From IMG/VR virus record IMGVR_UViG_3300023174_000046, positions 153,414 to 217,413 of that record: a stretch of 64,000 nt of DNA. The stretch is one strand, 5' to 3'. The translations under genes and the position numbers were made by a program. How positions within the stretch are numbered: position 1 is the stretch's first letter; each line of letters starts with the position of its first letter. Shown here piece by piece: positions 26,152-62,225 of this stretch. The notes beneath the pieces are model-generated. The model saw nothing but the letters and a program-made list of their open reading frames with translations. It had not been told where the DNA came from and ran no database searches.

Positions 26152-28584
26152 ATGAAAACAACAAACATAATAAAGAAGGCATTGAGCTTAATTGCCGCTG
26201 CTTTCATGACAACCGCAGCCAACAATGCCCAAGCAGTAGTGTTTCTATGGAACAACACTGGATCCAACTGGACATCCCCCACCAGCTGGACCAATGGCAT
26301 TCAACCTTCTGCAACCAGCTCCAGCACCACCACAGATGAAATACAGTTTGGTAATTATGGAGCCAACAATAACACTGTCATCTTGACATCCACCAGAGCT
26401 GCAAAAAATATCACATTCTTAGCCAATGCAAATCCATATTTGATCAACAGTTTCAATGGTGCTCAAACACTGTCATCTAGTGCAGGCATTACCAACAATT
26501 CTACTGCTACCCAAACATTCAACATATTGGTAGAGAATGCTAACAACAGTAACACCTGGTTTCAAACTGCAGGAGGAGCATTAGTATTCAATAATGTAGC
26601 TTCACTCACCACTGCATCTTCTAGCACATCCAGACTATTAACTCTGGCAGGAGATGGTGCATTCACATTCAACAATGAATTGAGGCAAGGTGGTTCAGCT
26701 ACAGCTGGCAGAGTCCTGTACACAGGCAATGGCACAGTCACATTCAATGGCACCAACACTCTGGGTGGAGGGTTTGAAATCAAAGGAGGAGGCACTGTGA
26801 ATGTGAATGGAGGCACTGGAGTCGGTCAAGGGTTGGTAACAATGGGAGCGGCAACTGGCACAACCAATACACCCAAATTGGTAATCAACACCACCAATGG
26901 CTTGTCTGTGGCCAACAGCTTCAAGGGTTCCAGCAGCTTAGCTACCATGGCCACATTGGATTTGCTAGCAGGCAATGATGCAAATGCAGTCACGACTTTT
27001 GTTGTGAATCAATATCAAGGCAACAACATGAGCTTCACCAACCATGGTGCAGGCAAAACACTGCTACAATTCACCAATGCTGCCAACATACTCACACTAT
27101 CCACAGACACCAGTGGTGGCAGGAGATTGATTAATAACAGCGCCAATTTAACTATACAGTTTGATGGCACCATGGACATTGGATCCACAACTGCAGATGT
27201 TAGTACTTTAGGTGGAGCAGGTGATCTTCTCTTCAAAGGATCTCTGTTCAACAACACAGCGTCAGTGCTCAGAGGATTGAACAAAACAGGCACTGGAACA
27301 GTCACTTTGCAAGCAGTCAATGCTTACAATGGAGACACTACCATTCAAGACGGTACACTGTTGGTGGACACTGCAGGTTCCATTGCTTCCAGTGCTGCTG
27401 TAGTATCAGGGGGTACTTTAAGAGTCAAAGGTACAGCTGGCAGTGCAGCACTTAATAGTGGAACCTTGCTAGTAGAAGGCACAGCTGGTGTAATAACACA
27501 AGGTGGGGGTACTTTTGATCTGAGAGGCACAGCTGGTGCCTTTACTATCTCCTCAGGAACTGCCACAGTGTATAGTGGTGGGTTTCTTGGCAACTCAACT
27601 CTCACTGGAGGCAGCTTGCTTAACAGTGGTACAGTAGGTGAAACAACCATTGCCACTGGCAGTACATTTGATGTGAAGACGGGCGGTACATCTTCCAAAG
27701 CTACTGTGAATGGTGGTACTTTGTTGGTATCAGGATCAGTGGCACAGACTGTTGTTAATTCTGGCACAGCCACAGTAAATTCTGGTGGTAATTCTGGCAT
27801 TACAACTGTGAATGGCAGTGCATTGAATGTGTATGGAAGAACTGGTGTATCCACAGTTAATACAGGTGGCACACTCAATGTAAAGACAGGTGGCAGTCTG
27901 TTGGGCACTAGCACTGTAGGTGGTGGCACATTGCTAGTGGATGGAACTGCTGGTACAGTAACAGTCAACTCTGGAACTGCTACAGTTAATACTGGAGGCA
28001 CAATTAACAGCACCACTGTGAATGGCGGTCTATTATCTGTGAATGGATCTGCAGGAGATGCATTGGTTAATACAGGAGGTACTTTGGGTGGTTCTGGTAG
28101 CGTGCAAGGCCTGACACTCAATGGTGGTATTGTGGCCCCAGGCAACAGCCCGGGTCTGCTCACTGCCTATGAGTTGAATGGAAGCAATGGAACATTCCAA
28201 TTCCAGTTGGGTGCACCTACTACCAGAGGGGTAACATATGATGCTATCAATGTGACAAGCTTGTTAACATTGGGTGCCAATACAGCATGGACATTTGAAA
28301 CCTTAGACAATTATGCATATGCTGATGGCAACACATATGACTTGTTTGATTGGGGTACAGCTGACATGAGCACATTTGATAGTGCAGTGCTGTTGGCTGC
28401 TCTGCCTGATCTTAACACTGCTAGTACAGATCTGAAATGGAATGTGAGCAACTTTACCATGGACGGTACAATTGGTGTTATTCCTGAACCTTCTACAGGT
28501 TCACTCATGGTGTTTGGTATTGCTAGCTTGATAACACTCAAAGCTATAAGGAGAAGAAAATGCCAACACCAAATACATTCCTAA
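26152..28584 (+). CDS. PEP-CTERM surface protein with autotransporter-associated beta-strand repeats
   Basis: Signal peptide; GLNKTGTGTVTL..N.Y.GDT.I..GTL; VAPGNSPG; C-terminal IPEPST-TM-RRRK. Confidence 0.92.
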   Translation: MKTTNIIKKALSLIAAAFMTTAANNAQAVVFLWNNTGSNWTSPTSWTNGIQPSATSSSTTTDEIQFGNYGANNNTVILTSTRAAKNITFLANANPYLINSFNGAQTLSSSAGITNNSTATQTFNILVENANNSNTWFQTAGGALVFNNVASLTTASSSTSRLLTLAGDGAFTFNNELRQGGSATAGRVLYTGNGTVTFNGTNTLGGGFEIKGGGTVNVNGGTGVGQGLVTMGAATGTTNTPKLVINTTNGLSVANSFKGSSSLATMATLDLLAGNDANAVTTFVVNQYQGNNMSFTNHGAGKTLLQFTNAANILTLSTDTSGGRRLINNSANLTIQFDGTMDIGSTTADVSTLGGAGDLLFKGSLFNNTASVLRGLNKTGTGTVTLQAVNAYNGDTTIQDGTLLVDTAGSIASSAAVVSGGTLRVKGTAGSAALNSGTLLVEGTAGVITQGGGTFDLRGTAGAFTISSGTATVYSGGFLGNSTLTGGSLLNSGTVGETTIATGSTFDVKTGGTSSKATVNGGTLLVSGSVAQTVVNSGTATVNSGGNSGITTVNGSALNVYGRTGVSTVNTGGTLNVKTGGSLLGTSTVGGGTLLVDGTAGTVTVNSGTATVNTGGTINSTTVNGGLLSVNGSAGDALVNTGGTLGGSGSVQGLTLNGGIVAPGNSPGLLTAYELNGSNGTFQFQLGAPTTRGVTYDAINVTSLLTLGANTAWTFETLDNYAYADGNTYDLFDWGTADMSTFDSAVLLAALPDLNTASTDLKWNVSNFTMDGTIGVIPEPSTGSLMVFGIASLITLKAIRRRKCQHQIHS

Positions 28585-30227: not shown

Positions 30228-31169
30228 ATGAAAACATTAATTTGCTTAGCCTTAATAGCAGTAGCAAGCCATAGTGCATGTGCTACCTCTGTATCTTTCT
30301 TAAAGAATAGTGTATATAAAATTGACAATACCAACAAAGTCACAGCTACTTTAAATGATAAAGTAGAATCCAACACACAAGTGGGCACAGGTGCACAGAG
30401 CATGTGTGAATTGTCATTAGATGATAAGTCCATAACACGCATTGGAGCCAATGCTGTCTTCACATTTGTAGAACAAGAGCGTTTGGTTAAATGCGACAAA
30501 GGAACATTTCTGGTTTCCAAAGATCCTGCAACAGAAACTATGACAGTTACCACAGGCAGTGTTACTGCTGCAGTTAATGGCAGCACTGTGATGTTTGATG
30601 TGACAGGTGATGCAACACATGTTGCTGTTGCTGAAACAACTACTGGAGTTGTGGTGACAGATAAGAATGGCAAATCTATAACATTGCAATCTGGTGAAGG
30701 CATCTCTGCAACACCTAATGGCATGGCATCTGCAGCTCCTAAATCTGTGGACGTTAAAGATCTAGCATCATCATCGCCTCTGTTTACTGAAGCGGGGTTG
30801 GCTCCTCTGGCCAATGATGCATTGATCAAGGGTGTTGCAAGCGCTCAAGAATCTGCAAAAGCTGCAGGCATGTCTTTTACAAGTGAAATTAATGATGTGG
30901 TAGCTGGTAGAATTGATAGTGCTACTGCTTTGGCCAGAGCCAGTGGCATGGATGCGCCAGGTGCTGATGTGCCTGACATTGATACTGCTGCAGGGGGTGA
31001 AGCTGTAGGTAGTAATGCACCTGCAGGCAGTGGAGCAGGAGCCATCTCTGGTTCACAGCAGTTTAATCCTTTATTGAATCCCAATCTTGTGCCCCCTGTA
31101 ACTTCTTCTCCCTTGCCTTCATTAGCTACGCCAATAGGAAGTGATATTACCCCTTATCCTGGTAGATAA
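30228..31169 (+). CDS. Secreted FecR-domain protein
   Basis: Signal peptide; TGAQSMCELSLDDKSITRIGAN; TGSVTAAVNGS. Confidence 0.8.
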   Translation: MKTLICLALIAVASHSACATSVSFLKNSVYKIDNTNKVTATLNDKVESNTQVGTGAQSMCELSLDDKSITRIGANAVFTFVEQERLVKCDKGTFLVSKDPATETMTVTTGSVTAAVNGSTVMFDVTGDATHVAVAETTTGVVVTDKNGKSITLQSGEGISATPNGMASAAPKSVDVKDLASSSPLFTEAGLAPLANDALIKGVASAQESAKAAGMSFTSEINDVVAGRIDSATALARASGMDAPGADVPDIDTAAGGEAVGSNAPAGSGAGAISGSQQFNPLLNPNLVPPVTSSPLPSLATPIGSDITPYPGR

Positions 31170-36107: not shown

Positions 36108-37073
36108 CTATAGTATATTTTTATACCATTCTATGGTTTGCTTGAGACCATCTTCAAAGTTAATCTTTGGTTCCCATTTCAGCTCGTTTCGTATCTTGGA
36201 GCTATCAATTGCATATATAAAGTCGTGGCCCTTGCGATCTTCAACAAATTCTATTAAACTGTCTTTGCGTTCAACAATCTCTAAAACCTTTTTTACTAAG
36301 TCTATATTTTTCATAATATCATAGGTTCCTATGTTATAAACTTCACCGCTCTTGCCTTGCTGCAATACAGTTAAAATAGCTCTGCAATGATCTTCTGCAT
36401 GAATCCATTCACGCATGTTGTCACCTTTGCCATAAACAGGTATGGCATGATTGTTAATAGCATTCAATATTGTTTTGGGTAATAGCTTTTCTTTGTGTTG
36501 ATATGGCCCATAGTTATTACTACAACGCGTGACACATACTTCCAGTTTAAACGTCTTGTGATAACTCAATGCAACAAGATCAGCAGAAGCTTTTGATGCT
36601 GAATAAACAGAGCTAGGATTAAGATTTGTTAATTCTGAGAAAAGCGGTTCATCCAAGTTATGCAGTTGACCATATACTTCATCAGTACTAACTTGAATGA
36701 ATTTCTCTACATCATATTTTCTTGAACACTCCAAAAGGTTAAAAGTGCCCACAACATTAGATGATATGAAAGGAGCAGGACCTGTTATGCTGTTATCCAC
36801 ATGTGACTCTGCAGCAATGTTTACTACTAGTTGTGGTTTGATTGCAGCAAAAATAGCATCCATCTTTTGAAAGTTAGATATGTCTTTCTTTATAAACTTT
36901 ATTCTTCTTCGATATTGTTTGTGCTCTTCTAAAAACTTTTTTATGTGTTGTTTCTGAGAAGCATAAGTCTCTGAATCCAGGTTAATAATCTTATAGTCTG
37001 TATTCTCTAATAAATGAATAAGAAAATGCGTGCCTATGAAGCCGTAGCCTCCTGTGACTAATATTTTGGCCAT
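36108..37073 (-). CDS. rmlB: dTDP-glucose 4,6-dehydratase
   Basis: GGYGFIG, AAESHVDNSI, STDEVYG, YSASKAS, NNYGPYQ. Confidence 0.93.
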   Translation of the reverse strand: MAKILVTGGYGFIGTHFLIHLLENTDYKIINLDSETYASQKQHIKKFLEEHKQYRRRIKFIKKDISNFQKMDAIFAAIKPQLVVNIAAESHVDNSITGPAPFISSNVVGTFNLLECSRKYDVEKFIQVSTDEVYGQLHNLDEPLFSELTNLNPSSVYSASKASADLVALSYHKTFKLEVCVTRCSNNYGPYQHKEKLLPKTILNAINNHAIPVYGKGDNMREWIHAEDHCRAILTVLQQGKSGEVYNIGTYDIMKNIDLVKKVLEIVERKDSLIEFVEDRKGHDFIYAIDSSKIRNELKWEPKINFEDGLKQTIEWYKNIL

Positions 37074-40252: not shown

Positions 40253-40614
40253 AAACGTTTAAAGAGTTTTTTATCGAATCAAAGCAAAAGCATTCTAAAC
40301 AAGAGGCGGGTTACGTGGCGCATACTGTTAAAGGTCAAAGATGTGATCAATGTACTATGTGGAGAGCTCCTAATAAATGCTCTGCAGTAGCAGGAGATAT
40401 CAAACCTGAAGCATGGTGCAAGTGGTGGAAGCAAAGCCACAGAAAAGATTTAAAAGAGAAGAGCATACATGATCCTGTAAGGCCTGGTATATTAAAGCGT
40501 CAGACCAAAGGCAAAATGACCTGCTCCAAAGCAAGAAGATTAAGGGCTAAGCAAAAGAATAAAGGTAACAATACAGCTAAAGCAGCTCAACGCTACTTAA
40601 ATTATCACTGTTAA
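40249..40614 (+). CDS. CTS-leader protein with HiPIP-like 4-Cys domain plus a basic module
   Basis: GTG start (M)KTFKEFFIE; CDQC...KC..V.G.I.PEAWC. Confidence 0.7.
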   Translation: MKTFKEFFIESKQKHSKQEAGYVAHTVKGQRCDQCTMWRAPNKCSAVAGDIKPEAWCKWWKQSHRKDLKEKSIHDPVRPGILKRQTKGKMTCSKARRLRAKQKNKGNNTAKAAQRYLNYHC

Positions 40615-41543
40615 GCCCACTGTGCTGTAAACGGCGTTGTGTAGTTTGTAAATGTGTTTGTAGCTGTCTTGTAAAGCTCAAAGCTATTAACTTGTATATA
40701 AGCCTGGTAACCATCATCCACATTGATGAATGTGCCATTAACCACAAACACATCTGCTGTGAGTGCTGGTGAGAACAGTGTCATACCAGCAGTTAGATTA
40801 GCTCTTGCTTGTGTGCTTGTAGCAGCACGAATAGATTCTGTTGCAAGCTTCATTCTTGTACCAATACCAGAAGTTGTTTGAAGCGAAGTTACATAATTAG
40901 CTGTTAAAGCTTTTCTTGTTGTTGTATCATCCCATAGAATTTTATTCAAGACATATTGCTGATAGTTGTTACCTGTACCGTAACCGGCGCCACCGGTACC
41001 AAAAGGAAATACATCACCACTTAATGGTGCAGTACTAGAAAGAGCATTGCTTGCTGTACCATAAACAGCAGGATTTACTAATCTATTCACAGCAACACCA
41101 ACAGCACCGCAAGTGTTTGAAAGTTCATTGCCTTGACCTCTTCTGAGCATGTAACCCAAATAGCCGCTCAAAGAGCATACACCAATATGAGGAGCAGAAA
41201 ATAACATTAATGCACCATTGGTAGCATATTGTATGTGTGAAGCCCATGCAAAGAGTGCAATTCTCCCAGTATGCGGGTAACCACCAATGCCACCTGCAAA
41301 AAATGGTCCTTGAAAATCATTCAAAGTAGCAGGCATTTGACCAATATTGTTATTGTAATAAGCTGGTGCATTTGCATCATCTGAACAAATTGAATCGGCT
41401 AATAAAACATTGTTGGCGCTATACCCACATAATGTTTGAATAAACGTTTTGCAATATCTGCCAAAATCTTCCACAAGAATGGCTCCAGGGTAGGCAGAAG
41501 CTGCTGTTACTATTGAGGTGTATGTTGATTGTGATATTGGCAT
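40611..41543 (-). CDS. LCIB-family (theta-type) carbonic anhydrase-like protein, copy 2
   Basis: ICSDD, GPFFAGGIGGYPHTG, APHIG, RRGQ, TCGA. Confidence 0.8.
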   Translation of the reverse strand: MPISQSTYTSIVTAASAYPGAILVEDFGRYCKTFIQTLCGYSANNVLLADSICSDDANAPAYYNNNIGQMPATLNDFQGPFFAGGIGGYPHTGRIALFAWASHIQYATNGALMLFSAPHIGVCSLSGYLGYMLRRGQGNELSNTCGAVGVAVNRLVNPAVYGTASNALSSTAPLSGDVFPFGTGGAGYGTGNNYQQYVLNKILWDDTTTRKALTANYVTSLQTTSGIGTRMKLATESIRAATSTQARANLTAGMTLFSPALTADVFVVNGTFINVDDGYQAYIQVNSFELYKTATNTFTNYTTPFTAQWA

Positions 41544-41551
41544 AAAAAATA

Positions 41552-42652
41552 TTAGTTGAGTTGTAATCCTGATTTAAATTGTGTAGTAAAGTCTTCGAAG
41601 GTATCTGTGGTCTTGTTGTATCTTAAGAAGTTTGTTACATCTGCATAAGCTTTAAATCCATCATCCACGTTAATAAATGTACCAGTGCTCAAGAACACAT
41701 CAACATTTCTGCCAGGGAACGCTGTTCTATAAGCAAGCTTGAATGTGCTGTTATTGTCAGGTTTAGCAATAATATTGAAAGCAGAGTTGCGAATTGCTTC
41801 TGTGGCCAATATCATTTGCTGCCCGAAGTCTGATGTTGCACAAATGGCTGTGCGTGCTGTTACATCATCATAAATTGCCTTGACAAGAGTATAGAATTGA
41901 AAATCCGATGCATTTGTTAACAATACATCAAGTGGATCAGGGCTAGGCCATTGAGGAGCAGGGCCGCTTACACCATTGTTTCTGATCCAATCAACAGCAG
42001 CTGCTGCAGCACCACAAGTTGCAGAAAGATTACCATAATTTTGACCGCGGCGTCTCATGTAACCTACTTGACCATCGCGAGTGATGCCAATGTGAGGGGC
42101 TATGTACAAGAATAGAGCACCTCCACTTGTGACGTGTGATGCATAAGCAAGGAGCCCTGTGGTACCAGTGTGTGGGTAACCATCTAAGCCGCCACCCATG
42201 AATGGTCCAAGGAAAGTTTGCAATGATTGAGGCATTTGACCGAGATTATTAATATTATTAAACACTGGTCCGTTCACATCATCAGAGCAAATAGATGATG
42301 AAAAGAGAACATTGCTTGGAGTGTAAGCAGCACTTACCGATTGAATATAAGTTTGTACGCGAAGACCAAAGTTTTCAGCTGTTGCAGCAGTTGGGTATGT
42401 CTTTCTTACCACATCACCATAATCAAGTTGTTGCGAAACTGGACCAGAATCAGATGTTAAACTGGAACCATGCATTAAGTTGTTATTCTCTAGTTCTGCA
42501 CGAGCTGCTTGTACTCTTTCTTCTATGATTTGTTGTTCAAATAAGAATTTCTTTTGAAAATCGGCTGATTGTGGCCTGCTAGGCACAACTACGGGGTTGC
42601 GAGGGCGACCATCATATTGCTTTAACCCATCTACATATTGCCTAGGAATCAT
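41552..42652 (-). CDS. LCIB-family (theta-type) carbonic anhydrase-like protein, copy 1, with N-terminal extension
   Basis: ICSDD, GPFMGGGLDGYPHTG, APHIG, RRGQ, TCGA; start MIPRQ 5 nt after TATAAATA. Confidence 0.82.
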   Translation of the reverse strand: MIPRQYVDGLKQYDGRPRNPVVVPSRPQSADFQKKFLFEQQIIEERVQAARAELENNNLMHGSSLTSDSGPVSQQLDYGDVVRKTYPTAATAENFGLRVQTYIQSVSAAYTPSNVLFSSSICSDDVNGPVFNNINNLGQMPQSLQTFLGPFMGGGLDGYPHTGTTGLLAYASHVTSGGALFLYIAPHIGITRDGQVGYMRRRGQNYGNLSATCGAAAAAVDWIRNNGVSGPAPQWPSPDPLDVLLTNASDFQFYTLVKAIYDDVTARTAICATSDFGQQMILATEAIRNSAFNIIAKPDNNSTFKLAYRTAFPGRNVDVFLSTGTFINVDDGFKAYADVTNFLRYNKTTDTFEDFTTQFKSGLQLN

Positions 42653-53107: not shown

Positions 53108-53356
53108 ATGAAAAGAACTAAGAAAAAACTAGAAACAAAAATGGGAACAATAGCCCTGGGTCCATTTAAAAAGGTAACCTACTATCAGGCTGATATGACA
53201 GGGCCAGAAAATTATCTAGAGATGATTGCTCAAGTTGGAAGAAACGTTATCACTCAAGCTGAATATGTGAATATTGGCATGAATCACATACTTACACATA
53301 TGATTGGCAATAAGTTCGAGCTGGATGTGCCCAGAAGCTTCAAAGCGAAAAAATGA
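53108..53356 (+). CDS. Hypothetical protein (early)
   Basis: TTGAAC-16-TATAAT-6-ATG. Confidence 0.6.
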   Translation: MKRTKKKLETKMGTIALGPFKKVTYYQADMTGPENYLEMIAQVGRNVITQAEYVNIGMNHILTHMIGNKFELDVPRSFKAKK

Positions 53357-54021
53357 ATAAGTTTAAATTCGAATGGCAATTCATGGATGGTAAATCTTCT
53401 GATAGGGTTGGCAGTGTGGAAATATGCAGACCAACATTGACAATGCAATTTGAAGCTACTACTATTGATGAGGTTTTGAGGCAAGTAGGCTATTTTCTCA
53501 AGGGATGTTCTTATGAATTTGAAGGACAGGTGGGCATTGTAGATGAATAAAGCACAAGCTCAACAAGCTCTCATGCGCATAGTACTGGAGCCTGGTATTG
53601 CTGATCAATATACAGAAGAAGAAATAGAAAGGTTAGAAGAGTTAGCAGCAAGAAAATAATTTATGAGTAAACCTAAAGGCATTCTCATAGATCCTCCTTC
53701 AGGTTGGCAGTTTGGATTTCCTGATTATTATATTGCAGAAGAGCATGGCACCATGGAAGACTTCCTACGTCTCAAAAAATATCCAGAGAAAGATATTGAA
53801 TTTGCAATGCAATACATGCGGATTATAGGTGAAGAAGAATGAGTGTAAGTCTTATTGTATTGGTGGGGTTGATATACCTATATGTGGCTGTGGATCAATT
53901 CCTTAAAGGCAATCCAGGCATGAGCATTTGTTATTTGAGTTACGCTGTAGCTCAAGTTGGATGGTACTGGATTGCAGTAAAATAGTGTTGACCTATTTTT
54001 AATTTCAGCCATAATAGTAGT

Positions 54022-54555
54022 ATGATGAATGAAACGATAGAACAAATTGATTGGAATGCATTGTATTCTGTAGGTAAAGATAGCAAAGAGTTTACCTTTG
54101 ATATGTTTGATCCTTTGCTTCTAGCAGAAAATCCTGTTAGTCAGAATTGGACAGCTACTGTTACTTTCCGAGGACGTTATGGTGATAGAGCTAATGCAAA
54201 GAAGAATATCATCTTTCGTGGTGGTGTTCCTGCTCCTCATGAACTGGAAGCTAGTCATTCCTGGTACATGGTACAACCTGAACATAGCGTTAAAGGTCAA
54301 GATAAAGAGAATGATAAACTGTGGCGCAAGTATAATAAGTTAGAGCTCAAGCTTGATGAAGTGTTCCTCGCAGGATTTTTCAACGTGGCTTCTTTTGAGA
54401 TTCAGAGCTTCCTCATTGAAGCAGGATGGTACTCTCGCAAGTTTAGCATGCGTGCAGGATGCAGCATGTGCCCATGCTCTCCAGGATATAATCTTAAAAG
54501 TGCAAATGGATTCATTAAGAATACCGCTATTAATGTGGTCTTTAAAAAGAAATGA
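54022..54555 (+). CDS. Hypothetical protein with AGCSMCPCSPG motif
   Basis: Early promoter 53988-54015. Confidence 0.65.
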   Translation: MMNETIEQIDWNALYSVGKDSKEFTFDMFDPLLLAENPVSQNWTATVTFRGRYGDRANAKKNIIFRGGVPAPHELEASHSWYMVQPEHSVKGQDKENDKLWRKYNKLELKLDEVFLAGFFNVASFEIQSFLIEAGWYSRKFSMRAGCSMCPCSPGYNLKSANGFIKNTAINVVFKKK

Positions 54556-54735
54556 TCCTCAAAGTGATGGAACAATATGATGGGCGTTTGCCTGTCTTCA
54601 GTGTAGTGAAAGAAGTTACTGCATGTGATAATTGCGGGTTCCAGAAAGATGAGATAATCAAATCTTTTGATACATATGAAGAAGCAGATGCTTATTGCAG
54701 TAGCTTAATTGCAGAAGGCAAAGCCAAAGGATAAC

Positions 54736-55200
54736 ATGTCAGCATACATTTATAAGTTAATCAAACCAACAAAGAGCATCTGGATGAAGATTCAGGTTGA
54801 TGGTGATACTACAGTTGTTAGCAACGTTTACCATATGAAATTCTGGTACAAGCCTTATGCCGGCATGGAAGATGATAAGAAGCTTCAGAAGAAGCTCAGC
54901 AGAGAAGAAGCTAAAACAAAAGAGCTCTTCAAAGATGTTGATGTGGAATATGCAATTACTACTTATGAGGGTGATATTAGCAAGCCCTTCATCCATGGCG
55001 ATTTCTTTGGGTGCTGGCAAGTAGTGGCATGGAAGAAGCTCAAGAATATTGAAGGTGATATTACTAATTATCCTGCAGGTACCAATCGCATTCTGTTCAA
55101 TGATGAAAGCTTCAGCAATGTGTGGTGCAAGGCTGTGCTGGCTGACAAAGAAGATATTTATGATCATTTAACTAGCCCTGGAATGAAGGTACTAGCATGA
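54736..55200 (+). CDS. Hypothetical protein
   Basis: Likely start MSAYIY. Confidence 0.55.
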   Translation: MSAYIYKLIKPTKSIWMKIQVDGDTTVVSNVYHMKFWYKPYAGMEDDKKLQKKLSREEAKTKELFKDVDVEYAITTYEGDISKPFIHGDFFGCWQVVAWKKLKNIEGDITNYPAGTNRILFNDESFSNVWCKAVLADKEDIYDHLTSPGMKVLA

Positions 55201-55505
55201 AAAATATGAACACAATGAAACACCTAGCACAACGAATCGTTAACTTCTATGTTAATAGAGCGCTCTTTGCAAAAGAAGATGCATTGAAAGAGTTCGTTCA
55301 AGTATGCAATCAATCAGAGGGAGTGAAAGGCTACAAGCTACTGGATGAACATGCCAAGTTTATTGCACGCTTCTATGATTGGTATGTGGGTGTAGCAGAT
55401 AGGCCTCTCTCTGACATGATGAAGCTCATGGATGATTTCTTTGAGCAAGAATGCGGTGAAGCAGGATACACTTGGGAAGATCATATTGAATACGCCAAGC
55501 GCTAA
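55197..55505 (+). CDS. Hypothetical protein
   Basis: ATGA overlap. Confidence 0.55.
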   Translation: MKNMNTMKHLAQRIVNFYVNRALFAKEDALKEFVQVCNQSEGVKGYKLLDEHAKFIARFYDWYVGVADRPLSDMMKLMDDFFEQECGEAGYTWEDHIEYAKR

Positions 55506-55831
55506 AGACGCCAAGCATGAAGCGTTCATTACAAACTATCACGTGAAGTGTCAAGATGTTCTCAACAGAATGGGACCTGAAGCTCGCAAGATGATTCAAT
55601 GCAACAAAGACTTGAATGACATGTATGATATCTTTCTTGATTTTATTCTGGATACTCGTATAATGGTAGAATGAAAAAGCACATCCCCGATCCATATTGG
55701 CATAAAGTTATTAGCTTTGCAAAGAGTGGTCTGCGCATATTGGCCGGCACTGCACTCATTTTCTTCTGGATGCCCATTGCTGGCATCTTGTTCATTGCAG
55801 CAGAGTTGCTGGGTATCTTGGAGGAGATGGT

Positions 55832-56146
55832 ATGAGCATGCTAGCAATGCAAATGAGTGAACACATCAAATCAAACATTCTATCTTCTACAGCTTCACTC
55901 TGGCATGCCATGGGCATTGAAGTAACACAAGATAAAATCTGGAATGATCTGGCCCGCAGTGGCAATGGTGGCATTGAAGCCACATTCTATGTTACTGGAT
56001 TGGATAATGTGGTGCGAAAAGAATTTAATGCGCATGTGGAAACGCTCAAATCAAGCAATCCATGCATTCAAGAATTCAAAGTCAAGTTCAAGAGACCAGA
56101 GAAAGAAGTTCGTTTCTTTATTAAGATTGCAAATGAAACACATTAA
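55832..56146 (+). CDS. Hypothetical protein
   Basis: ATGA overlap. Confidence 0.55.
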   Translation: MSMLAMQMSEHIKSNILSSTASLWHAMGIEVTQDKIWNDLARSGNGGIEATFYVTGLDNVVRKEFNAHVETLKSSNPCIQEFKVKFKRPEKEVRFFIKIANETH

Positions 56147-56444
56147 GAACTTTGTATTTGACTTTGTTGGTTTCTTTATCATAGTGCTTGGCTCCTTTTT
56201 TATGCTTGTAGCAGAGATTGTGACTGTAGCAAAGCAAACATTAGAGAACATATTCTATGATGTCATTTGGCCTGCAATGGTAGAAGCATTCACTGATGTG
56301 TGTCTCATATGCATGATTGTATCACAAGGTGTTTGTGAGGCATTATCCAATTGCTTCCTTGGTGTGTCCAAATTCTCGCTTTGGATTGCACAATATTTTC
56401 ACAACAAATCTGAGTCTCTTATCACTGTTACTTGGCGCGATTAA
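56133..56444 (+). CDS. Hydrophobic hypothetical protein
   Basis: Likely start MKHIK. Confidence 0.5.
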   Translation: MKHIKNFVFDFVGFFIIVLGSFFMLVAEIVTVAKQTLENIFYDVIWPAMVEAFTDVCLICMIVSQGVCEALSNCFLGVSKFSLWIAQYFHNKSESLITVTWRD

Positions 56445-56634
56445 CTAAATAATTGCATGACATATGCGCGCTTAAGAGACATCATTGGTATGATGAATGG
56501 TGCACAATTGAATGCACCTGTTAAAGTGGTTGTGGCTGGCAAAGAGATTTTCATTGACAGAGTGGATGCAGAAGATAACAATGCAAATGCTCCTTATCTC
56601 AATTCAAACAAAGACGTTTAATTTTTGAACAAGG

Positions 56635-57705
56635 TCACAAGGACCATTTTTCAGTCAAATAAGAATTAACTGCAATCAATTCTGCATCAGTCAGAATTCT
56701 TTCATAAGCAAAAAATTCTCCAATGACACCATTGAAGTAGGCAATTTCAGAAACAAATCTGCGTCCAATGGCAACTTTGGCAGCATTGGTAGTAGATGAA
56801 TTGCCTTTGGTTTGAAAATCAGGATCTGATCCTGCAGCAGCACCATTGAACAATATGTCCACTTCGCCTGCTGCATAGTTAATTTTGGCTGTTATGATGC
56901 CAGGAGCAGTGTTATTCTTGAATGTGGCAGTGCTGATATCAGCAGGTGCTCCTTTGTCGTTCAAATCAGAATCAAGTCTCCTGCCTCCAGCTGCAAAATA
57001 CCATCCTTCATCATCAGCAGGGGCACCTGGTATCACAGATGGATTGCTCATGAATTTGATTCTGGAACCATTGCCTCCTCCTGGGCTAGGTCTGGTGGTG
57101 GTGAAAATAGCTTCAGGAAGTACAATGCCTGTGTTAGGATTGCCAAACTGTGCCACACAAACCAATGTGATGCCCGCCACATTGTTGGCAAAAGTGAGGG
57201 AGTTCGCATTACCGTTCAAATGATTGCCACTGTTGGAATCAAATTTTAGGTAATTCATGCCTTGGTAGGATGACAGAGCTGGACGAATGAGGCTGTTGGA
57301 TTGTTCAAAGTGTCTGTTGTTTGTGCTCAAGTCCAGCCATGTGGCCACTGGTGTGTTGAGAGCACAAGGGTTGCCAGATGCATCCAACACACTGACTCTG
57401 CGACTTGAATCAAGCCATATGCCTGGATTTGCAGCAGGGGGCACAAGTGGGTTGCTTCCAGCGCTGCCTGGATCTGCTCCAATGCCCATGGCCGCATCTC
57501 TGGATGCACCATGGTGTTCCAATTGTTTGCGAGCTTCTTGTATGATGCGCATTTGTTGCTGTTGATCAAAAGCCATGCTATCATTAATCATTCGCTTCTG
57601 TTGTTGATTGGGAAGCGCCGGACGCCAAGTGTTGGTATCTGGAGGATAAACTACATTTCTCCCCGGATCAGTGAGCGCATTTAAATAGTCATCAAACCAG
57701 TCCAT
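56635..57705 (-). CDS. Late protein: MDWFDDYL leader module + LamG/ConA-like domain
   Basis: WLDSS...VATWLDLS...F.G.IGE...Y.R.LT..E...V..YL..KW. Confidence 0.75.
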   Translation of the reverse strand: MDWFDDYLNALTDPGRNVVYPPDTNTWRPALPNQQQKRMINDSMAFDQQQQMRIIQEARKQLEHHGASRDAAMGIGADPGSAGSNPLVPPAANPGIWLDSSRRVSVLDASGNPCALNTPVATWLDLSTNNRHFEQSNSLIRPALSSYQGMNYLKFDSNSGNHLNGNANSLTFANNVAGITLVCVAQFGNPNTGIVLPEAIFTTTRPSPGGGNGSRIKFMSNPSVIPGAPADDEGWYFAAGGRRLDSDLNDKGAPADISTATFKNNTAPGIITAKINYAAGEVDILFNGAAAGSDPDFQTKGNSSTTNAAKVAIGRRFVSEIAYFNGVIGEFFAYERILTDAELIAVNSYLTEKWSL

Positions 57706-57713
57706 AACAGTAT

Positions 57714-60086
57714 TTATCCTGGTAAATTCTTAACAACAGTTATATTAGTACCACCTGCTATGCTTTGACCTGCACCAGCAGTCCAGGTGGCATCGCTGGC
57801 TCGAGCATATATTGTACGGCCATTGAGAGTACTTAATGAACCTGCTTCATACACAGTCAATGGAGCAAAGGAACTGATGGTGAGCAAGCTTGTGCAGTTG
57901 TATAAAAACAATCCTCCAATAGATGCAATGCCATTGGGTATGAGTATATTGGTTAAAGACGGGTTTTGTGCAAATGCATAACTGCAAAGGATTGCAGTGC
58001 TAGTGTTTGCTATGTTCACAGCAGTTAATGAGTTTAAATTGAATGCAAATCGACCAACTATGGACACGCTGCCGGGTATGCTCACAGACTTTAACGCATT
58101 GCTTGCAAATGCACCATCACCAATGTATGTTACATTGCTGGGTATATTCACTGCAGACAAATTGTTGCCTTGAAATGCATTGGTACCTATGCTTGTCATA
58201 TTGTTAGGTATAGTTACAGCAGACAATTGATTGTATAAGAATGCACCTATACCTATGCTTGTCATATTGTTAGGTATGTCTACAGCAGACAATTTGTTTT
58301 GTGCAAATGCATAGTCAGGTACAAAATTTATACCAGTCCCCAGTGTAAGGATGGATATATTGTTGCTTTGAAATGCACCTCCACCCATGCTGGTGACAGT
58401 GTCAGGTATGCTCACAGCAGACAATTTGTTGCCGTAGAATGCAAATAAATTAATATTTGTCACGCTGTTGGGTATGGTCACAGCAGACAAATTGTTTAGG
58501 CTAAATGCATAATTTCCTATGGTTGCAACGCTACTGCCCAATGTCAAGAAGGATATGGTGTTGCTTTGAAATGCATAATTGCCAATGGCTGTCACACTGT
58601 TGGGTATGTTCACAGCAGATAATTTCTGGTTATTGAATGTACTTGAGCCAATATATTGCACACTGTTGCCCAGTGTCAAGGAGGATATGTTGTTGCTTTG
58701 AAATGCAGTAGAATCAATATATGTAACTGAGTCTGGTATGTTAACTACAGTTAATTTGTTGTTACCAAATGCATACTCTCCTATGTATGTGACACCATTG
58801 GGTATGGTTGCAGCAGACAAATTGTTGTTGGCAAATGATTGATATGCAATGTTGGTCACACCATTGGGTATGACAATGTCATTCAATCGATTGTCCTTGA
58901 ATGCCTGGTATGATGTGAAGGACAGACCAGTTGGCAGTGTTACAGCAGACAATGCATTGGCAGCAAAAGACAAAGATGCACCAGCTGCACCTTGCTTGGG
59001 CAAACTAACTGCACTCAACTTGTTGTTGGTGCAATACAAGTTTGATATATTCCTACTGCTAGCCACATCCAGGTATGTTAATGCATTGTAATTGCAATTC
59101 ATTTCTTTTAATGCAGAAAGGCTTGACACATCCAGAGATGACAGACTGTTGTAATTCACATAAAGATATTGTATGTTGTTGCATCCTGAAAAATATATGG
59201 AAGAAAGAAGCAATCCTCCTGTTCCAGAGCTGTAATAGCCTTCATAATTATTAACAAAAACACTGATTAGCTTAGGAAGATTGGTGAAAGTAAAAGATGT
59301 GAATTGATTATTTTGCATATAAATAACTTCTAAATCCGTGCATCCAAAAAGATTCACAGATGATAGCCGATTGGATGCAATATTAACAGAGTTTATTTTG
59401 TTGTTGTTGGAAAGATTCAGTGTGGTAAGTTTACCGCCGGGCGCCTGTAAAGATGTTAAGTTCGGAACATTAGTCAGATTGATGGCGGTTAAATTATTGT
59501 TGATACAGTAGAGAGAATGAAGACTGCTGAGACCAGATGCTTGAACAGAAGATAGAACATATTGAAAACCGGCATCATGTTGATAGCTACAATCCAGTAA
59601 CTCTAGTGCAGGCATCTGAGCAGACAGATTGTTCAAAGATGTAAACCAATTAGAATTGCAGTTCAACTGCTTCAGCTTGTGCAAGCCAATGACAGGCAAA
59701 CTTGTAAGTTTATTGCTATTGCAATCTAGTATTTCAACATTTTGCAAATCAAACCCCGTGGTAGGGTCAATTGAATCCCACCCACCCAGCATAGTGGCTA
59801 TTTGCAAATGCTTTACCACTGGTGACAGTATCAGGTCTTCCTGTTCTATGTTATTGTATGACACGTTTAGTTTTGTTGCCAAGGGAAACTGTGTGGCATC
59901 AAAATAATCAAACAAATTGCTGCTCACATCCAGAGTCACAATATTATTTTTACCTGTGATTGCTTGCATCCAGCTGTTCAGCTGACATTCAGCCATGGTC
60001 AAATCCAACTGAGAACAACGGGATGCATCCACACCCTGCATGGGTATTCCTGCAACGTATAACCGGTTAATTTTACCTGTTTTCAT
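57714..60086 (-). CDS. Leucine-rich repeat protein (internalin-type LRR + BspA/LRR_5)
   Basis: L.C..N.L..L repeats then IP.SVT.IG..AF..N.L repeats; in frame with the upstream ORF across one TGA. Confidence 0.88.
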   Translation of the reverse strand: MKTGKINRLYVAGIPMQGVDASRCSQLDLTMAECQLNSWMQAITGKNNIVTLDVSSNLFDYFDATQFPLATKLNVSYNNIEQEDLILSPVVKHLQIATMLGGWDSIDPTTGFDLQNVEILDCNSNKLTSLPVIGLHKLKQLNCNSNWFTSLNNLSAQMPALELLDCSYQHDAGFQYVLSSVQASGLSSLHSLYCINNNLTAINLTNVPNLTSLQAPGGKLTTLNLSNNNKINSVNIASNRLSSVNLFGCTDLEVIYMQNNQFTSFTFTNLPKLISVFVNNYEGYYSSGTGGLLLSSIYFSGCNNIQYLYVNYNSLSSLDVSSLSALKEMNCNYNALTYLDVASSRNISNLYCTNNKLSAVSLPKQGAAGASLSFAANALSAVTLPTGLSFTSYQAFKDNRLNDIVIPNGVTNIAYQSFANNNLSAATIPNGVTYIGEYAFGNNKLTVVNIPDSVTYIDSTAFQSNNISSLTLGNSVQYIGSSTFNNQKLSAVNIPNSVTAIGNYAFQSNTISFLTLGSSVATIGNYAFSLNNLSAVTIPNSVTNINLFAFYGNKLSAVSIPDTVTSMGGGAFQSNNISILTLGTGINFVPDYAFAQNKLSAVDIPNNMTSIGIGAFLYNQLSAVTIPNNMTSIGTNAFQGNNLSAVNIPSNVTYIGDGAFASNALKSVSIPGSVSIVGRFAFNLNSLTAVNIANTSTAILCSYAFAQNPSLTNILIPNGIASIGGLFLYNCTSLLTISSFAPLTVYEAGSLSTLNGRTIYARASDATWTAGAGQSIAGGTNITVVKNLPG

Positions 60087-60089
60087 GTG

Positions 60090-60596
60090 TCAAATGCCTC
60101 CATTCACATCACAGGATGTCACTTGCACCAAGCGCGGTGCAGCATATGGATCATCTGGTGCAATGTAGTGTTCAAAATATAACTCATCACCAGGGACACC
60201 TGAGCCAATGACTTCAGATGTGCCATCCCAATATTGCACAAATGCATACCCCGTGGATGTGTATACATATGCATATACATATTGACCTGGATCAACATTG
60301 TAATACAAAGACACAGTCTCTGCCACAATAGGTGCGGCAGGACTGCCTGGATCTGCTCCAATGCCTTCTGCCACATCTGCATGCGACATGTGACCATGTG
60401 TGTGTTCCTCCAGCTCATGTCTGGCCTCTTGAATCATCTTCATTTGTTGCTGTTGATCAAAAGCCATGCTATCATTGATCATTCTTTTCTGTTGTTGATT
60501 GGGACGAGCAGGGCGCCAAGTATATGTGTCTGGGGGGTAGTTAACTGTTCTGCCGGGATCGGTGAGCGCATTTAAATAATCATCAAACCAGTCCAT
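60090..60596 (-). CDS. MDWFDDYL leader module + N-terminal part of the LRR protein
   Basis: N-terminus duplicates 56635..57705; late TAAATA. Confidence 0.7.
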   Translation of the reverse strand: MDWFDDYLNALTDPGRTVNYPPDTYTWRPARPNQQQKRMINDSMAFDQQQQMKMIQEARHELEEHTHGHMSHADVAEGIGADPGSPAAPIVAETVSLYYNVDPGQYVYAYVYTSTGYAFVQYWDGTSEVIGSGVPGDELYFEHYIAPDDPYAAPRLVQVTSCDVNGGI

Positions 60597-60834
60597 ATCT
60601 AATTATTTATGAATAAATAAAATAAAAATAGGCTGGAGCTTGAGTGAATAATCACATATAATAACAACATGCCCAAGAAGAAAGTAACATTAAGAACGGT
60701 GAGAGAGCTGGGTAAAAGGATTGCAAAGAACAAGCCTTTTGTAGGTGAATGCATTGACCGAACTTCTGGTAAAATCATTAATTTGGACGGTCGGCTTGTG
60801 AGAAAATTAGGAAAGAAATCTAAATAATATTGAT

Positions 60835-61347
60835 ATGGTTAATGATAGTCACTTGATATTTGAAAATTATGTGGATGGCATCTCCAAAAGAAAAGGTGAG
60901 CTGGCCGGAAACATCATGGACATTGTGAGATACGGTATTCCTTCCAAAGAAGAGTTTATTAAGATCAGACAAGAACTGCATGACAAAACAAAAGAAATTT
61001 TAGACAGAGGTACTCCTGCAACAGAAGAAGAGAAACACCGAGGCAGGCAGTTGATAGGCATGATAAGATCCTACAGAGCTCAACATCCCAATGATCCTCC
61101 TGTGGCTAAAAACCTGCATCATGCAGAAGAGAGTGCAGAAAATACACAGCCTGCAGATGTATCCAATGAAATCAGAATCAAATTGGGACAAGCCTATAAT
61201 ATAGTCAAAGGTTTAATTGAGCTGCTGGACAAGACACCCTCAGAACAAACACCATACAATGAGATGGCCATAACCCATCTGGCCAATCTGGAGGAAGATT
61301 TAAAAGAATTATCCATGATGCTTCAAGACAGAATGCTGGGTAAATAA
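60835..61347 (+). CDS. Putative internal head protein (LIFE leader)
   Basis: MVNDSHLIFENY; EESAEN linker; TAAATA 60821. Confidence 0.65.
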   Translation: MVNDSHLIFENYVDGISKRKGELAGNIMDIVRYGIPSKEEFIKIRQELHDKTKEILDRGTPATEEEKHRGRQLIGMIRSYRAQHPNDPPVAKNLHHAEESAENTQPADVSNEIRIKLGQAYNIVKGLIELLDKTPSEQTPYNEMAITHLANLEEDLKELSMMLQDRMLGK

Positions 61348-61352
61348 TTGAT

Positions 61353-62225
61353 ATGAGAAAAGATGATCATTTGATATTTGAATCTTTTATTAATAAGAAA
61401 GGTGATGCTGGCGTTGGTCGGCCGGCTTCAGAAGAAGAAATTAACGTTAGTAAAGCTGATCTGAACAAGGATAAACAATTGAGTGATTATGAATTGGCCC
61501 GGGCTAAAGCCATGGACAAAGCCATGCACAAAGATGAACAAGCAGAGAGCAAGTCTACAGGCCGAGGTGCAGTGAATGACATAGTGGTTTCAGAGTTGCA
61601 TAAGATACATACAGCATTGAATCAGATGTCTAGCATGATTGATTTAAATCCTAGTGCAGAGGTGGATCAATTGTTATCTAAGATAAGGGATGTGGCTGAT
61701 ATGCTAATTGCAGAAAGGCCTGCAGAGAATGAAGAGAGTGCGGATGAAAGAAAAGAGCGGGTACAAAGAGGATGGGATATAAACAAGAAGAGATGGGCTA
61801 AATGGAAGATGGAGAATCCAGAGGCTGCTGCTAAACATGCTGCAAAGAAAGCTACTGGTAAAGAAGAGAGTGCAGAGAATGAACCACATGGTTATCCTCA
61901 GGGAATGACAGCTATTCAGAACTTGTTGTTAAATGAATTGAAGAAGTATGGCTTTGAATTAACAAGAATTAGTCATACAGATAAAGAGAGAGACAAGTAC
62001 CCAACGGTATTCATGCATAATAAGAGTGGACCGATGCATAGGGTAGTAGAGATTAGCGGTATGGGTGAGATCAATGGTGAGCCTTATAAGAAGTATCTGG
62101 CTGATTTAAAAGAGAAAATCAAACGTTTATCTGGTATAAGACCTGAAAATCCAGAAGATCCTTATTATGATACATGGCAGAGCATTGCTCAAGATCATGC
62201 TGGTGAAGAAGAAGAAGATTGCTAG
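61353..62225 (+). CDS. Modular putative internal head protein (LIFE leader)
   Basis: MRKDDHLIFESF; EQAE, ENEESADE, EESAENE linkers; ADLNKDKQLSDYE. Confidence 0.65.
   Translation: MRKDDHLIFESFINKKGDAGVGRPASEEEINVSKADLNKDKQLSDYELARAKAMDKAMHKDEQAESKSTGRGAVNDIVVSELHKIHTALNQMSSMIDLNPSAEVDQLLSKIRDVADMLIAERPAENEESADERKERVQRGWDINKKRWAKWKMENPEAAAKHAAKKATGKEESAENEPHGYPQGMTAIQNLLLNELKKYGFELTRISHTDKERDKYPTVFMHNKSGPMHRVVEISGMGEINGEPYKKYLADLKEKIKRLSGIRPENPEDPYYDTWQSIAQDHAGEEEEDC

What the first reader, a model, noticed from the sequence alone, without database searches (positions are those of the whole stretch)
56635..60596. Duplicated ~80-aa N-terminal module fused to different cargo domains
Seen: MDWFDDYLNALTDPGR...WRPA.PNQQQKRMINDSMAFDQQQQM...EAR..LE.H...GIGADPGS heads both the LamG-like and the LRR proteins, with DNA-level similarity (~57465-57705 vs ~60345-60596). 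Each copy has its own late promoter. The LCIB copy-1 extension (RP...QKKFLFEQQ...QAARAELE) is weakly similar. Inference: a plug-in virion anchor that displays interchangeable lectin, LRR or enzyme heads.
Basis: partly seen in the sequence, partly recalled or inferred. Interest (0 to 1): 0.6.

Follow-up and report, generated by a model that had tools for sequence, protein, structure and literature searches.

The report
Shared N-terminal docking module, swappable adhesin heads
An uncultured freshwater T4-like phage carries two late genes that begin with the same undescribed ~85-residue helical module, and relatives attach that module to dozens of different sugar- or surface-binding domains; this is most likely a new example of the familiar phage design of a conserved virion anchor with an exchangeable adhesin head.

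Summary
The duplication is real. Residues 1-81 of ORF 56635-57705(-) and 1-85 of ORF 60090-60596(-) are 74% identical (E 4e-45) and 78% identical in DNA. Many differences are synonymous, so the protein itself is under selection.

One correction: copy B heads a 168-aa ORF, not the LRR ORF. A TGA, one codon and an ATG, all in frame, separate the two. Three phage lineages and several independent assemblies keep this junction, with a GGAGG ahead of the ATG. A relative (P0037) has module, small domain and LRR in one chain. A co-fold of the small domain with the LRR N-terminus passed its controls (0.81 against 0.34). So the LRR is probably tied to module B as a second subunit.

A profile search of 1.84 billion proteins found about 70 cluster representatives with the module always at the extreme N-terminus. 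Cargos include LamG, PA14/GLEYA, CBM5/12+LRR_5, fn3-like domains, PT-linkers and many unknowns. Every context examined was phage-like. The module matches no Pfam, PHROG or PDB family.

Both genes carry the NATAAATA motif that also precedes the tail sheath, tube and fibre genes. The virion-anchor role is inferred and the docking site is unknown. The LCIB similarity is weak and unresolved.

The parts
60604..60611 (-). CATAAATA, a T4-late-promoter-like motif 7 nt upstream of the ATG of module gene B
   Evidence: Sequence. Across the genome, 45 of 85 NATAAATA sites lie 4-9 nt before the start of an ORF of at least 50 aa. These include the tail sheath, tube and fibre genes.
60342..60596 (-). Module copy B (aa 1-85, MDWFDDYL...GIGADPGS) of the 168-aa ORF
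   Evidence: HMM E 1e-48.
60093..60341 (-). Short linker plus a small all-beta domain (aa 86-168) of the 168-aa 'adaptor' protein
   Evidence: No Pfam or PHROG match. Homologous domains occur in P0052, P0111, P0022 and P0037. It is predicted to pair with LRR residues 2-28.
60090..60092 (-). In-frame TGA stop that splits the adaptor from the LRR gene
   Evidence: The same junction, AATGGAGGCATT TGA NNN ATG, occurs in L005 and L007. The same stop is present in at least 5 independent assemblies. P0037 is uninterrupted at this point.
60097..60101 (-). GGAGG Shine-Dalgarno-like element 10 nt upstream of the LRR ATG, inside the end of the adaptor gene
   Evidence: It is fully conserved, synonymous positions included, in three lineages.
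57714..60086 (-). LRR protein, 790 aa (LRR_4/LRR_8 in the N-terminal half, BspA-type LRR_5 in the C-terminal half)
   Evidence: Pfam LRR_5 E 3.9e-96 and LRR_4 E 1.4e-10; PHROG matches.
57711..57718 (-). GATAAATA late-promoter-like motif 5 nt upstream of module gene A; the LRR stop TAA (57716-57714) lies inside it
57463..57705 (-). Module copy A (aa 1-81) of the 356-aa ORF
   Evidence: HMM E 3e-51.
56635..57462 (-). Linker plus LamG-like (concanavalin-A-like lectin) cargo of the 356-aa ORF
   Evidence: Laminin_G_3 E 7.4e-6, 26.6 bits against a 27.6 cut-off. phrog_10356 'virion structural protein' E 2.1e-9. The orthologue P0001 is 94% identical.
42368..42652 (-). N-terminal extension (about 95 aa) of LCIB carbonic-anhydrase-like copy 1; a possible, unproven distant relative of the module
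   Evidence: The extension is conserved in 18 LCIB homologues. hhalign A5 against A7 gave probability 75.8% over 71 collinear columns. HMM E was 0.35 and 5. TATAAATA lies 5 nt before the ATG at 42652.

Best explanation
The ~85-residue module (short helix 3-11, a PPD..TW loop, long helix 34-66, then a flexible GIGADPGS hinge) is a docking element. It most likely attaches late-expressed adhesin or lectin 'heads' to the outside of the virion of an uncultured freshwater T4-like phage lineage. The element is conserved because it must fit a conserved phage partner. Whatever lies behind the hinge is exchanged freely between phages by recombination at a single hyperplastic slot.

The window's phage carries two cassettes in tandem. 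The first is module B with a small beta domain; a separately translated, translationally coupled 790-aa LRR protein binds this domain by strand complementation. The second is module A with a LamG-like lectin.

Shown: the duplication, selection on the protein, the strictly N-terminal position, the cargo diversity, the phage-only contexts, the shared late-gene motif and the conserved split junction. Inferred: attachment to the virion. The site (capsid face as in Hoc or pb10, or neck, baseplate or fibre) is not resolved.
For: The duplication has far more synonymous than non-synonymous change: in codons 1-60, 34 are identical, 19 differ synonymously and 7 non-synonymously.

The profile search returned 99 representatives at E<=1e-3. 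About 70 carry the whole module at residues 1-90, in proteins up to 1775 aa.

Cargos are Laminin_G_3, GLEYA/PA14, fn3, LRR_4/5/8 and CBM_5_12, plus PT-rich linkers. They fall into 26 BLAST components.

Cargo class changes 26 times on the module tree. The minimum possible is 10 and label shuffles give 33.3 +/- 1.5.

The same slot, flanked by homologues of the 170-aa and 290-aa genes, holds LamG alone (L003), CBM5/12-LRR_5 (L004), adaptor plus LRR (L007), an fn3-like cargo (L013), or both cassettes (the window).

NATAAATA sits 4-9 nt before start codons at 45 of its 85 sites. It precedes the tail sheath, tail tube, a tail-fibre protein and a head-tail adaptor as well as both module genes.

The LamG cargo matches a PHROG annotated as virion structural protein.

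The module model is helical and non-globular (pLDDT 75.5, pTM 0.35), as expected of an element that folds on a partner.

For the adaptor-LRR pair, the co-fold scored 0.81 against a best control of 0.34. That mark was reached by 51 of 78 solved complexes and 2 of 108 mismatched pairs. The runs shared at least 88% of contacts and the partner's pLDDT was at least 87. The single-chain homologue P0037 is collinear across the stop, E 1e-32.
Against: There is no direct evidence that any module protein is in a virion: no cultured relative, no proteome, no structure. tblastn found no match in 50,697 GenBank phage records.

No binding partner was tested; the single co-fold job went to the adaptor-LRR pair.

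The genes lie outside the main structural gene block, among small unknown ORFs.

NATAAATA could be a translation-initiation signal rather than a promoter, and it also precedes non-structural genes such as LCIB and, at 13 nt, the RNR small subunit.

If the LCIB extension is truly a module relative, an enzyme cargo fits a surface adhesin display less well.
Confidence: 0.55

Rival explanations
1. The module is a self-association or other non-virion docking domain. It might multimerise lectin heads for avidity, or target late proteins to a host or phage-made structure in the infected cell or lysate, without being part of the particle.
For: The module is essentially one long amphipathic helix plus a short one, with low pTM; such elements often oligomerise. 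The possibly related extension on a carbonic-anhydrase-like LCIB protein would suit an oligomerisation or targeting tag better than virion display. The genes sit outside the structural block.
Against: The helix lacks a regular heptad pattern (my reading of the sequence; not computed). The cargo set (LamG, PA14/GLEYA, CBM5/12, LRR, fn3, PT-linkers) is typical of displayed adhesins. The genes share the motif found before tail genes. A PHROG structural-protein match exists.
Confidence: 0.2
2. The module is a long capsid-targeting propeptide, analogous to the CTS of the T4 internal proteins. It would load cargo into the prohead and be cut by the gp21-type protease at the conserved I55-Q56-E57|A58 motif.
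For: E57 is invariant and I55 and Q56 nearly invariant in the close set. E57 and R59 are nearly invariant in the wide set. (L/I)-x-E is the T4 prohead protease motif (established knowledge). The genome is T4-like, with Portal_T4 and Gp23.
Against: A three-residue motif is expected by chance about 0.5 times in 88 residues (my estimate). The whole helix is conserved, not just the motif. Conserved sequence continues after the putative cut, up to GIGADPGS. Lectin, LRR, CBM and PT-linker cargos of up to 1775 aa suit an external role, not packaging inside a head.
Confidence: 0.08
3. The adaptor and LRR are made as one chain by programmed read-through of the conserved in-frame UGA, in the manner of Q-beta A1, so module B would literally head part of the LRR protein pool.
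For: TGA, one codon and ATG in frame are kept in three lineages, while the spacer codon itself varies between CAC and TGC. P0037 is a natural single-chain version. In the co-fold, the adaptor's C-terminal residues 159-162 contact LRR residues 2-11.
Against: A conserved GGAGG 10 nt before a conserved ATG is the ordinary signature of a coupled downstream gene. With only 3 nt between stop and start, and three related sequences, frame conservation carries little weight. No read-through signal was identified, and no RNA or protein data exist.
Confidence: 0.12
4. The repeat matters only at the DNA level, as a homology arm or a recent duplication or assembly artefact, and has no protein function of its own.
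For: Contigs break at the two copies in several metagenome assemblies, and a hybrid-module variant exists. A 4.5-kb contig starts right at module A. The repeat very likely does serve as the recombination substrate.
Against: 19 synonymous against 7 non-synonymous differences in 60 codons show selection on the protein. The module is conserved down to about 35-40% identity in about 70 clusters while always starting at residue 1. The two-copy arrangement recurs in independent assemblies.
Confidence: 0.03

Closest known systems
Modular phage receptor-binding proteins with a conserved N-terminal particle-binding domain and exchangeable C-terminal heads (P22/Sf6/HK620 tailspikes, K1E/K1-5 and CBA120/G7C multi-tailspike systems, T7 gp17) [from established knowledge]
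   Same: A conserved N-terminus with a horizontally swapped C-terminus. Several proteins in one genome share the anchor. Expression is late. Recombination at the conserved part creates mosaics.
   Different: Those anchors are globular domains of trimeric fibres or spikes. Here the element is an ~85-aa helical segment followed by a flexible hinge. The heads are domain types that are usually monomeric (LamG, PA14, LRR, CBM5/12, fn3). There is no sequence or family match.
T4 Hoc and T5 pb10 capsid decoration proteins [from established knowledge]
   Same: Dispensable-looking late proteins encoded outside the core structural block. A small conserved capsid-binding part carries adhesin or Ig-like domains. 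Domain content varies widely between related phages. pb10 has the same polarity, with an N-terminal anchor.
   Different: Hoc's capsid-binding domain is C-terminal. Neither family is detectably similar in sequence. Capsid binding was not tested here.
T4 fibritin (Wac) N-terminal neck-binding segment [from established knowledge]
   Same: A short N-terminal segment docks a long, otherwise independent protein to the particle.
   Different: Fibritin is a trimeric coiled coil with a foldon. There is no similarity, and no coiled-coil body here.
BspA-type LRR_5 and LRR_4/8 surface proteins (Pfam PF13306, PF12799)
   Same: The 790-aa ORF and several relatives' cargos match these families strongly.
   Different: Here the LRR is encoded by a phage and coupled to, or in relatives fused to, the phage-specific module. 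It has no signal peptide or cell-wall anchor architecture.
T4 late promoter TATAAATA / gp55 regulon [from established knowledge]
   Same: The same 7-8 nt motif lies upstream of structural genes and of both module genes.
   Different: The motif lies at a nearly fixed 4-9 nt from the start codon. That implies leaderless or near-leaderless late mRNAs, or a translational role. No transcript data exist.

Membership tests
Pfam, PHROG or PDB family for the module itself | Significant profile match of the ~85-aa module to a described family | tested here: not met
   There was no Pfam match on the module region. PHROGs gave nothing better than E 0.015. The PDB sequence profile search gave a best E of 0.86. 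BFVD Foldseek gave a best E of 1.4. The Atlas feature search gave at most 0.83.
Phage N-terminal-anchor / swappable-head adhesins (functional class) | The same N-terminal segment is joined to unrelated C-terminal domains in related phages | tested here: met
Phage N-terminal-anchor / swappable-head adhesins (functional class) | The N-terminal segment binds a virion component, so the protein is in the particle | not testable with these tools
   There is no cultured relative or proteome.
T4-type late regulon | A TATAAATA-like -10 element upstream of the gene, shared with structural genes | tested here: met
   CATAAATA and GATAAATA lie 7 and 5 nt before the two ATGs. The same motif and spacing occur before the sheath, tube, fibre and adaptor genes. 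Late timing itself was not measured.
Laminin_G_3 (PF13385) for cargo A | Score at or above Pfam's gathering cut-off | tested here: inconclusive
   26.6 bits against 27.6, E 7.4e-6, C-terminal part only. Relatives' cargos reach E 3.6e-23. The AF2 model failed with pLDDT 33.
LRR_5 / BspA-like (PF13306) for the 790-aa ORF | Score above the gathering cut-off with multiple repeats | tested here: met
   318 bits against 27.7, in 5 stretches.
Module membership of the LCIB N-terminal extension | Significant profile or profile-profile match over the module | tested here: inconclusive
   hhalign gave 75.8% probability over 71 columns. HMM E was 0.35 and 5.
Programmed stop-codon read-through gene | An in-frame stop conserved with a downstream ORF lacking its own initiation signals | tested here: not met
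   The downstream ORF has a conserved ATG and GGAGG. Low-level read-through is not excluded.

The most novel reading that the evidence does not exclude
The module is a general 'docking peptide' of a previously unrecognised freshwater T4-like lineage. It would load not only adhesins but also enzymes (the LCIB carbonic-anhydrase-like protein, through a diverged copy) onto the particle. The conserved in-frame UGA would yield both a free adaptor and a read-through adaptor-LRR fusion, giving the phage a tunable mixture of heads.
Probability: 0.1. Interest if true: 0.7.

Novelty: new member of a known kind. Interest (0 to 1): 0.45.

Why it matters
If the module is a virion anchor, it defines a compact, sequence-recognisable tag. 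That tag would mark the host-interaction proteins of a whole uncultured lineage of large freshwater phages, with about 70 protein clusters and more than 26 head types. It would give a direct handle on host-range determinants from metagenomes alone. It would also offer a natural ~85-aa display tag with proven tolerance for heads from 60 to 1700 residues.

The locus is a clean natural example of cassette gain and loss by recombination at a shared module. The split adaptor/LRR pair shows gene fission with retained assembly. None of this overturns current ideas: it extends a known design principle to a new family.

Tried and rejected
- Megablast of the locus and tblastn of the module against 50,697 GenBank phage records found no match. 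The portal is only about 35% identical to cyanomyovirus portals, so no cultured relative or proteome is available.
- The search for related loci with the single module in viral contigs returned only the window's own record. With A2 it returned 3 IMG/VR loci and one 'genome' hit.
- The 'genome' hit, in an Actinomycetota MAG, is a 4.5-kb contig 100% identical to the window. It is a binned phage contig, not a cellular gene.
- The metagenome scan with the small domain found only the window's own contig.
- The 29 long multi-stretch hits of the profile search are bacterial multi-GAF proteins. Their inter-domain helix matches only profile positions about 35-85, so I rejected them as module homologues.
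- The AF2 model of the full 356-aa protein failed (pLDDT 33, 8-sequence alignment), so it was not used.
- Foldseek of the module model against BFVD and the Atlas feature search gave nothing meaningful.
- P0035's small domain shows no direct BLASTP similarity to the window's. The link exists only through P0022 (E 1.5e-5) and directly to P0037.
- No RNA run holds the locus, so start sites and read-through could not be examined.
- Literature searches found no description of the module or of phage LCIB.
- Alternative genetic code: rejected, because the genome has very long table-11 ORFs and nothing suggests TGA recoding. In one script the single stop was read as X, only to align P0037 across it.
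Full report
**Setting.** The window is the last 64 kb of a 217,413-bp IMG/VR virus record (Ga0214921_10000052), rated 100% complete. It is a T4-like phage. It has a Portal_T4 gene (E 4e-100), a Gp23 major capsid gene, and tail sheath, tail tube and tail-fibre genes. Its portal is only about 35% identical to any GenBank phage, the nearest being cyanomyoviruses. The locus has no nucleotide or tblastn match among 50,697 phage records. The DNA occurs in lake and freshwater metagenomes from several studies.

**The observation.** ORF 56635-57705(-) is 356 aa and ORF 60090-60596(-) is 168 aa. Both begin MDWFDDYLNALTDPGR... and stay alike up to GIGADPGS. BLASTP gives 68/92 identical, E 4e-45. The DNA is 78% identical, with a 36-nt exact run. 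Nothing beyond the module is alike. A module HMM finds exactly these two copies in the whole genome.

In codons 1-60, 34 codons are identical, 19 differ only synonymously and 7 change the residue. So the copies are old or came from different phages, and the protein sequence is under purifying selection.

Copy B does not head the LRR ORF. The 168-aa ORF stops at TGA 60092-60090. One codon (CAC) and the ATG of the 790-aa LRR ORF (57714-60086) follow in the same frame.

- The stop is not an error. The identical 168-aa product is called on 7 contigs from independent samples.
- The junction AATGGAGGCATT-TGA-NNN-ATG-AAAACAGG is kept in two diverged lineages, L005 and L007. Only the spacer codon varies, between CAC and TGC.
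- GGAGG lies 10 nt before the ATG and is conserved even at synonymous positions. This is the usual picture of a translationally coupled downstream gene.
- A relative, P0037 (389 aa), has module, small domain and LRR in one uninterrupted chain. It aligns collinearly across the window's stop, which was read as X for this one alignment (E 1e-32).
- A co-fold of adaptor residues 86-168 with LRR residues 1-320 scored 0.81 against a best control of 0.34. That mark was reached by 51 of 78 solved complexes and 2 of 108 mismatched pairs. The runs agreed in at least 88% of contacts and the partner's pLDDT was at least 87.
- The predicted interface joins LRR residues 2-28 to adaptor residues 91-115 and 153-162.

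The model supports binding but does not prove it. My reading is that a once-continuous protein was split. The LRR now rides on module B as a second subunit, and low-level read-through remains possible.

**What the module is.** It matches no Pfam, PHROG or PDB-sequence family. Structure and feature searches gave nothing. With a 62-sequence alignment, AlphaFold2 gives helix 3-11, a loop with the conserved PPD..TW, helix 34-66 and a disordered hinge. Mean pLDDT is 75.5, reaching 93-95 in the long helix, and pTM is 0.35. This is not a globular domain; it looks like an element that packs on a partner.

**Catalogue of relatives.** A word search found 12 relatives. A full profile search of 1.84 billion representatives found 99 at E<=1e-3.

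- About 70 of the 99 carry the whole module, always starting at residue 1. Three begin at residue 10-19 because of upstream start calls.
- The other 29 are bacterial multi-GAF proteins. Their linker helix matches only half the profile, and I rejected them.
- Cargos include Laminin_G_3, GLEYA/PA14, fn3, LRR_4/5/8 and CBM_5_12 plus LRR_5. There are long Pro/Thr linkers and many domains with no family. Protein lengths reach 1775 aa.
- Cargos fall into 26 BLAST components. By the first 160 cargo residues they form 11 classes plus 19 singletons.
- On a tree of the module alone, cargo class changes 26 times. The minimum possible is 10 and label shuffles give 33.3 +/- 1.5. Closely related modules therefore carry unrelated heads, and the same head type sits on distant modules. 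The tree rests on 88 columns and is poorly resolved, so this is a qualitative result.

**Context.** In L003, L004, L007 and L013 the module gene occupies the same slot as in the window. On one side lie homologues of the divergently transcribed 170-aa and 290-aa genes; on the other lie homologues of window genes 52-56 kb.

The slot's content differs:
- LamG alone in L003.
- CBM5/12-LRR_5 plus a sulfotransferase in L004.
- Adaptor plus LRR in L007.
- An fn3-like cargo in L013.
- Both cassettes in the window.

Against L003, the window has about 2.9 kb extra between the two module copies. This is what recombination at the module would produce. Lake metagenome contigs break at the copies. One sample holds both an L003-like variant and a variant with a hybrid module (contig-level evidence only). 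More distant members also sit in phage-like contigs. The only 'cellular' hit is a 4.5-kb contig identical to the window that was binned into an Actinomycetota MAG.

**Regulation.** NATAAATA occurs 85 times in the genome. Of these, 61 lie within 45 nt upstream of the start of an ORF of at least 50 aa, and 45 lie at 4-9 nt. Genes preceded this way include the tail sheath, tail tube, a tail-fibre protein and a head-tail adaptor, and both module genes. That the motif is a promoter, and that expression is late, follows by analogy with T4 and was not measured. The stop codon of the LRR gene lies inside the motif of the LamG gene.

**Mechanism proposed.** The module is a docking element that holds exchangeable adhesin heads on the particle. 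Five points support this:
- selection on the protein;
- the strict N-terminal position followed by a flexible hinge or PT linker;
- heads that are all binding domains of extracellular type;
- co-regulation with tail genes;
- a PHROG structural-protein match for the LamG head.

Against it, no particle data exist, no partner was tested and the genes lie outside the structural block. T4 hoc also lies outside that block (from my own knowledge). I put this explanation at 0.55. Rivals are a non-virion oligomerisation or targeting tag (0.2), read-through fusion as the way the LRR is attached (0.12, compatible with the main view), a capsid-targeting propeptide cut at the conserved IQE|A (0.08), and a purely DNA-level repeat (0.03).

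**LCIB.** LCIB copy 1 (41552-42652, -) has an extension of about 95 aa that is conserved in 18 homologues. Profile-profile comparison with the module gives 75.8% probability over 71 collinear columns, both N-terminal. HMM searches are not significant. I leave this open. It should not be counted as an 'enzyme head'.

**Comparison and novelty.** The design of a conserved N-terminal anchor with swapped heads is well known from tailspikes, tail fibres and decoration proteins such as pb10 and Hoc. The module itself is an undescribed family. Its short helical form, its monomer-type lectin heads and the split adaptor/LRR pair are unusual details. I rate it a new member of a known kind, of moderate interest.

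**Limits.**
- The second structure job failed (pLDDT 33).
- Only one co-fold job was available.
- No RNA data hold the locus.
- The genome-collection scans use short peptide patterns, so they see only fairly close relatives.

Noticed in passing
whole genome G000; in the window e.g. 10672, 14607, 25803(-), 33713(-), 42652(-), 42686: NATAAATA sits at an almost fixed 4-9 nt before start codons (45 of its 85 occurrences). If it is the T4-type late -10 element, late mRNAs would be leaderless or nearly so, which is unusual for T4-like phages. It could instead be a translation signal.
   Followed up: partly
window 40611-41543(-) and 41552-42652(-): Two tandem LCIB/LCIC-type beta-carbonic-anhydrase-like genes sit in a phage (PF18599, E 4e-20 and 7e-31). 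Only the first has the conserved ~95-aa N-terminal extension, which at least 18 metagenomic homologues share. I found no paper describing phage LCIB.
   Followed up: partly
window 60835-61347(+) and 61353-62225(+): The two divergently transcribed acidic neighbours of the slot share an N-terminal motif of their own (M..D.HLIFE..; BLASTP E 4e-4). They are conserved next to the module gene in L003, L004, L007 and L013. They have no family match.
   Followed up: partly
L016 = RFYI01000060.1 (4.5 kb), equal to window about 53350-57890: A contig 100% identical to the window is binned in an 'Actinomycetota bacterium' MAG and starts right at module A. It is probably mis-binned phage DNA. It is at most a faint host hint, together with the leaderless-looking starts.
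   Followed up: partly
window 57711-57718: The TAA stop of the LRR gene is embedded in the GATAAATA motif of the next gene, so cassette boundaries coincide with the regulatory motif.
   Followed up: yes
window 1892-3310, 12920-14533, 14607-19304, 26152-28584, 30228-31169, 36108-37073: Other notable genes in the window: a tryptophan halogenase, an RCC1-repeat protein, a 1565-aa late protein of unknown function, a PATR-repeat protein, a FecR-domain protein and a GDP-mannose-dehydratase-like epimerase.
   Followed up: no
lake metagenome run X4, contigs over window 56498-57642 and 57623-60503: One sample holds at least two strain variants at this locus. One is an L003-like LamG-only form. The other is a high-depth form whose module at position A resembles copy B. 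Contig-level evidence only.
   Followed up: partly
G003 (IMGVR_UViG_3300027747_004779, 158 kb), L015/L020: A 158-kb relative that IMG/VR classes as 'provirus' carries one module gene (506-aa frame) 1.5 kb from its contig end. The provirus call was not examined.
   Followed up: no
profile search hits P0070, P0075, P0079, P0089: Linker helices between the GAF domains of bacterial multi-GAF proteins mimic the module's long helix well enough to reach E 1e-10 by summed repeats. This is a trap for profile searches with the module.
   Followed up: yes
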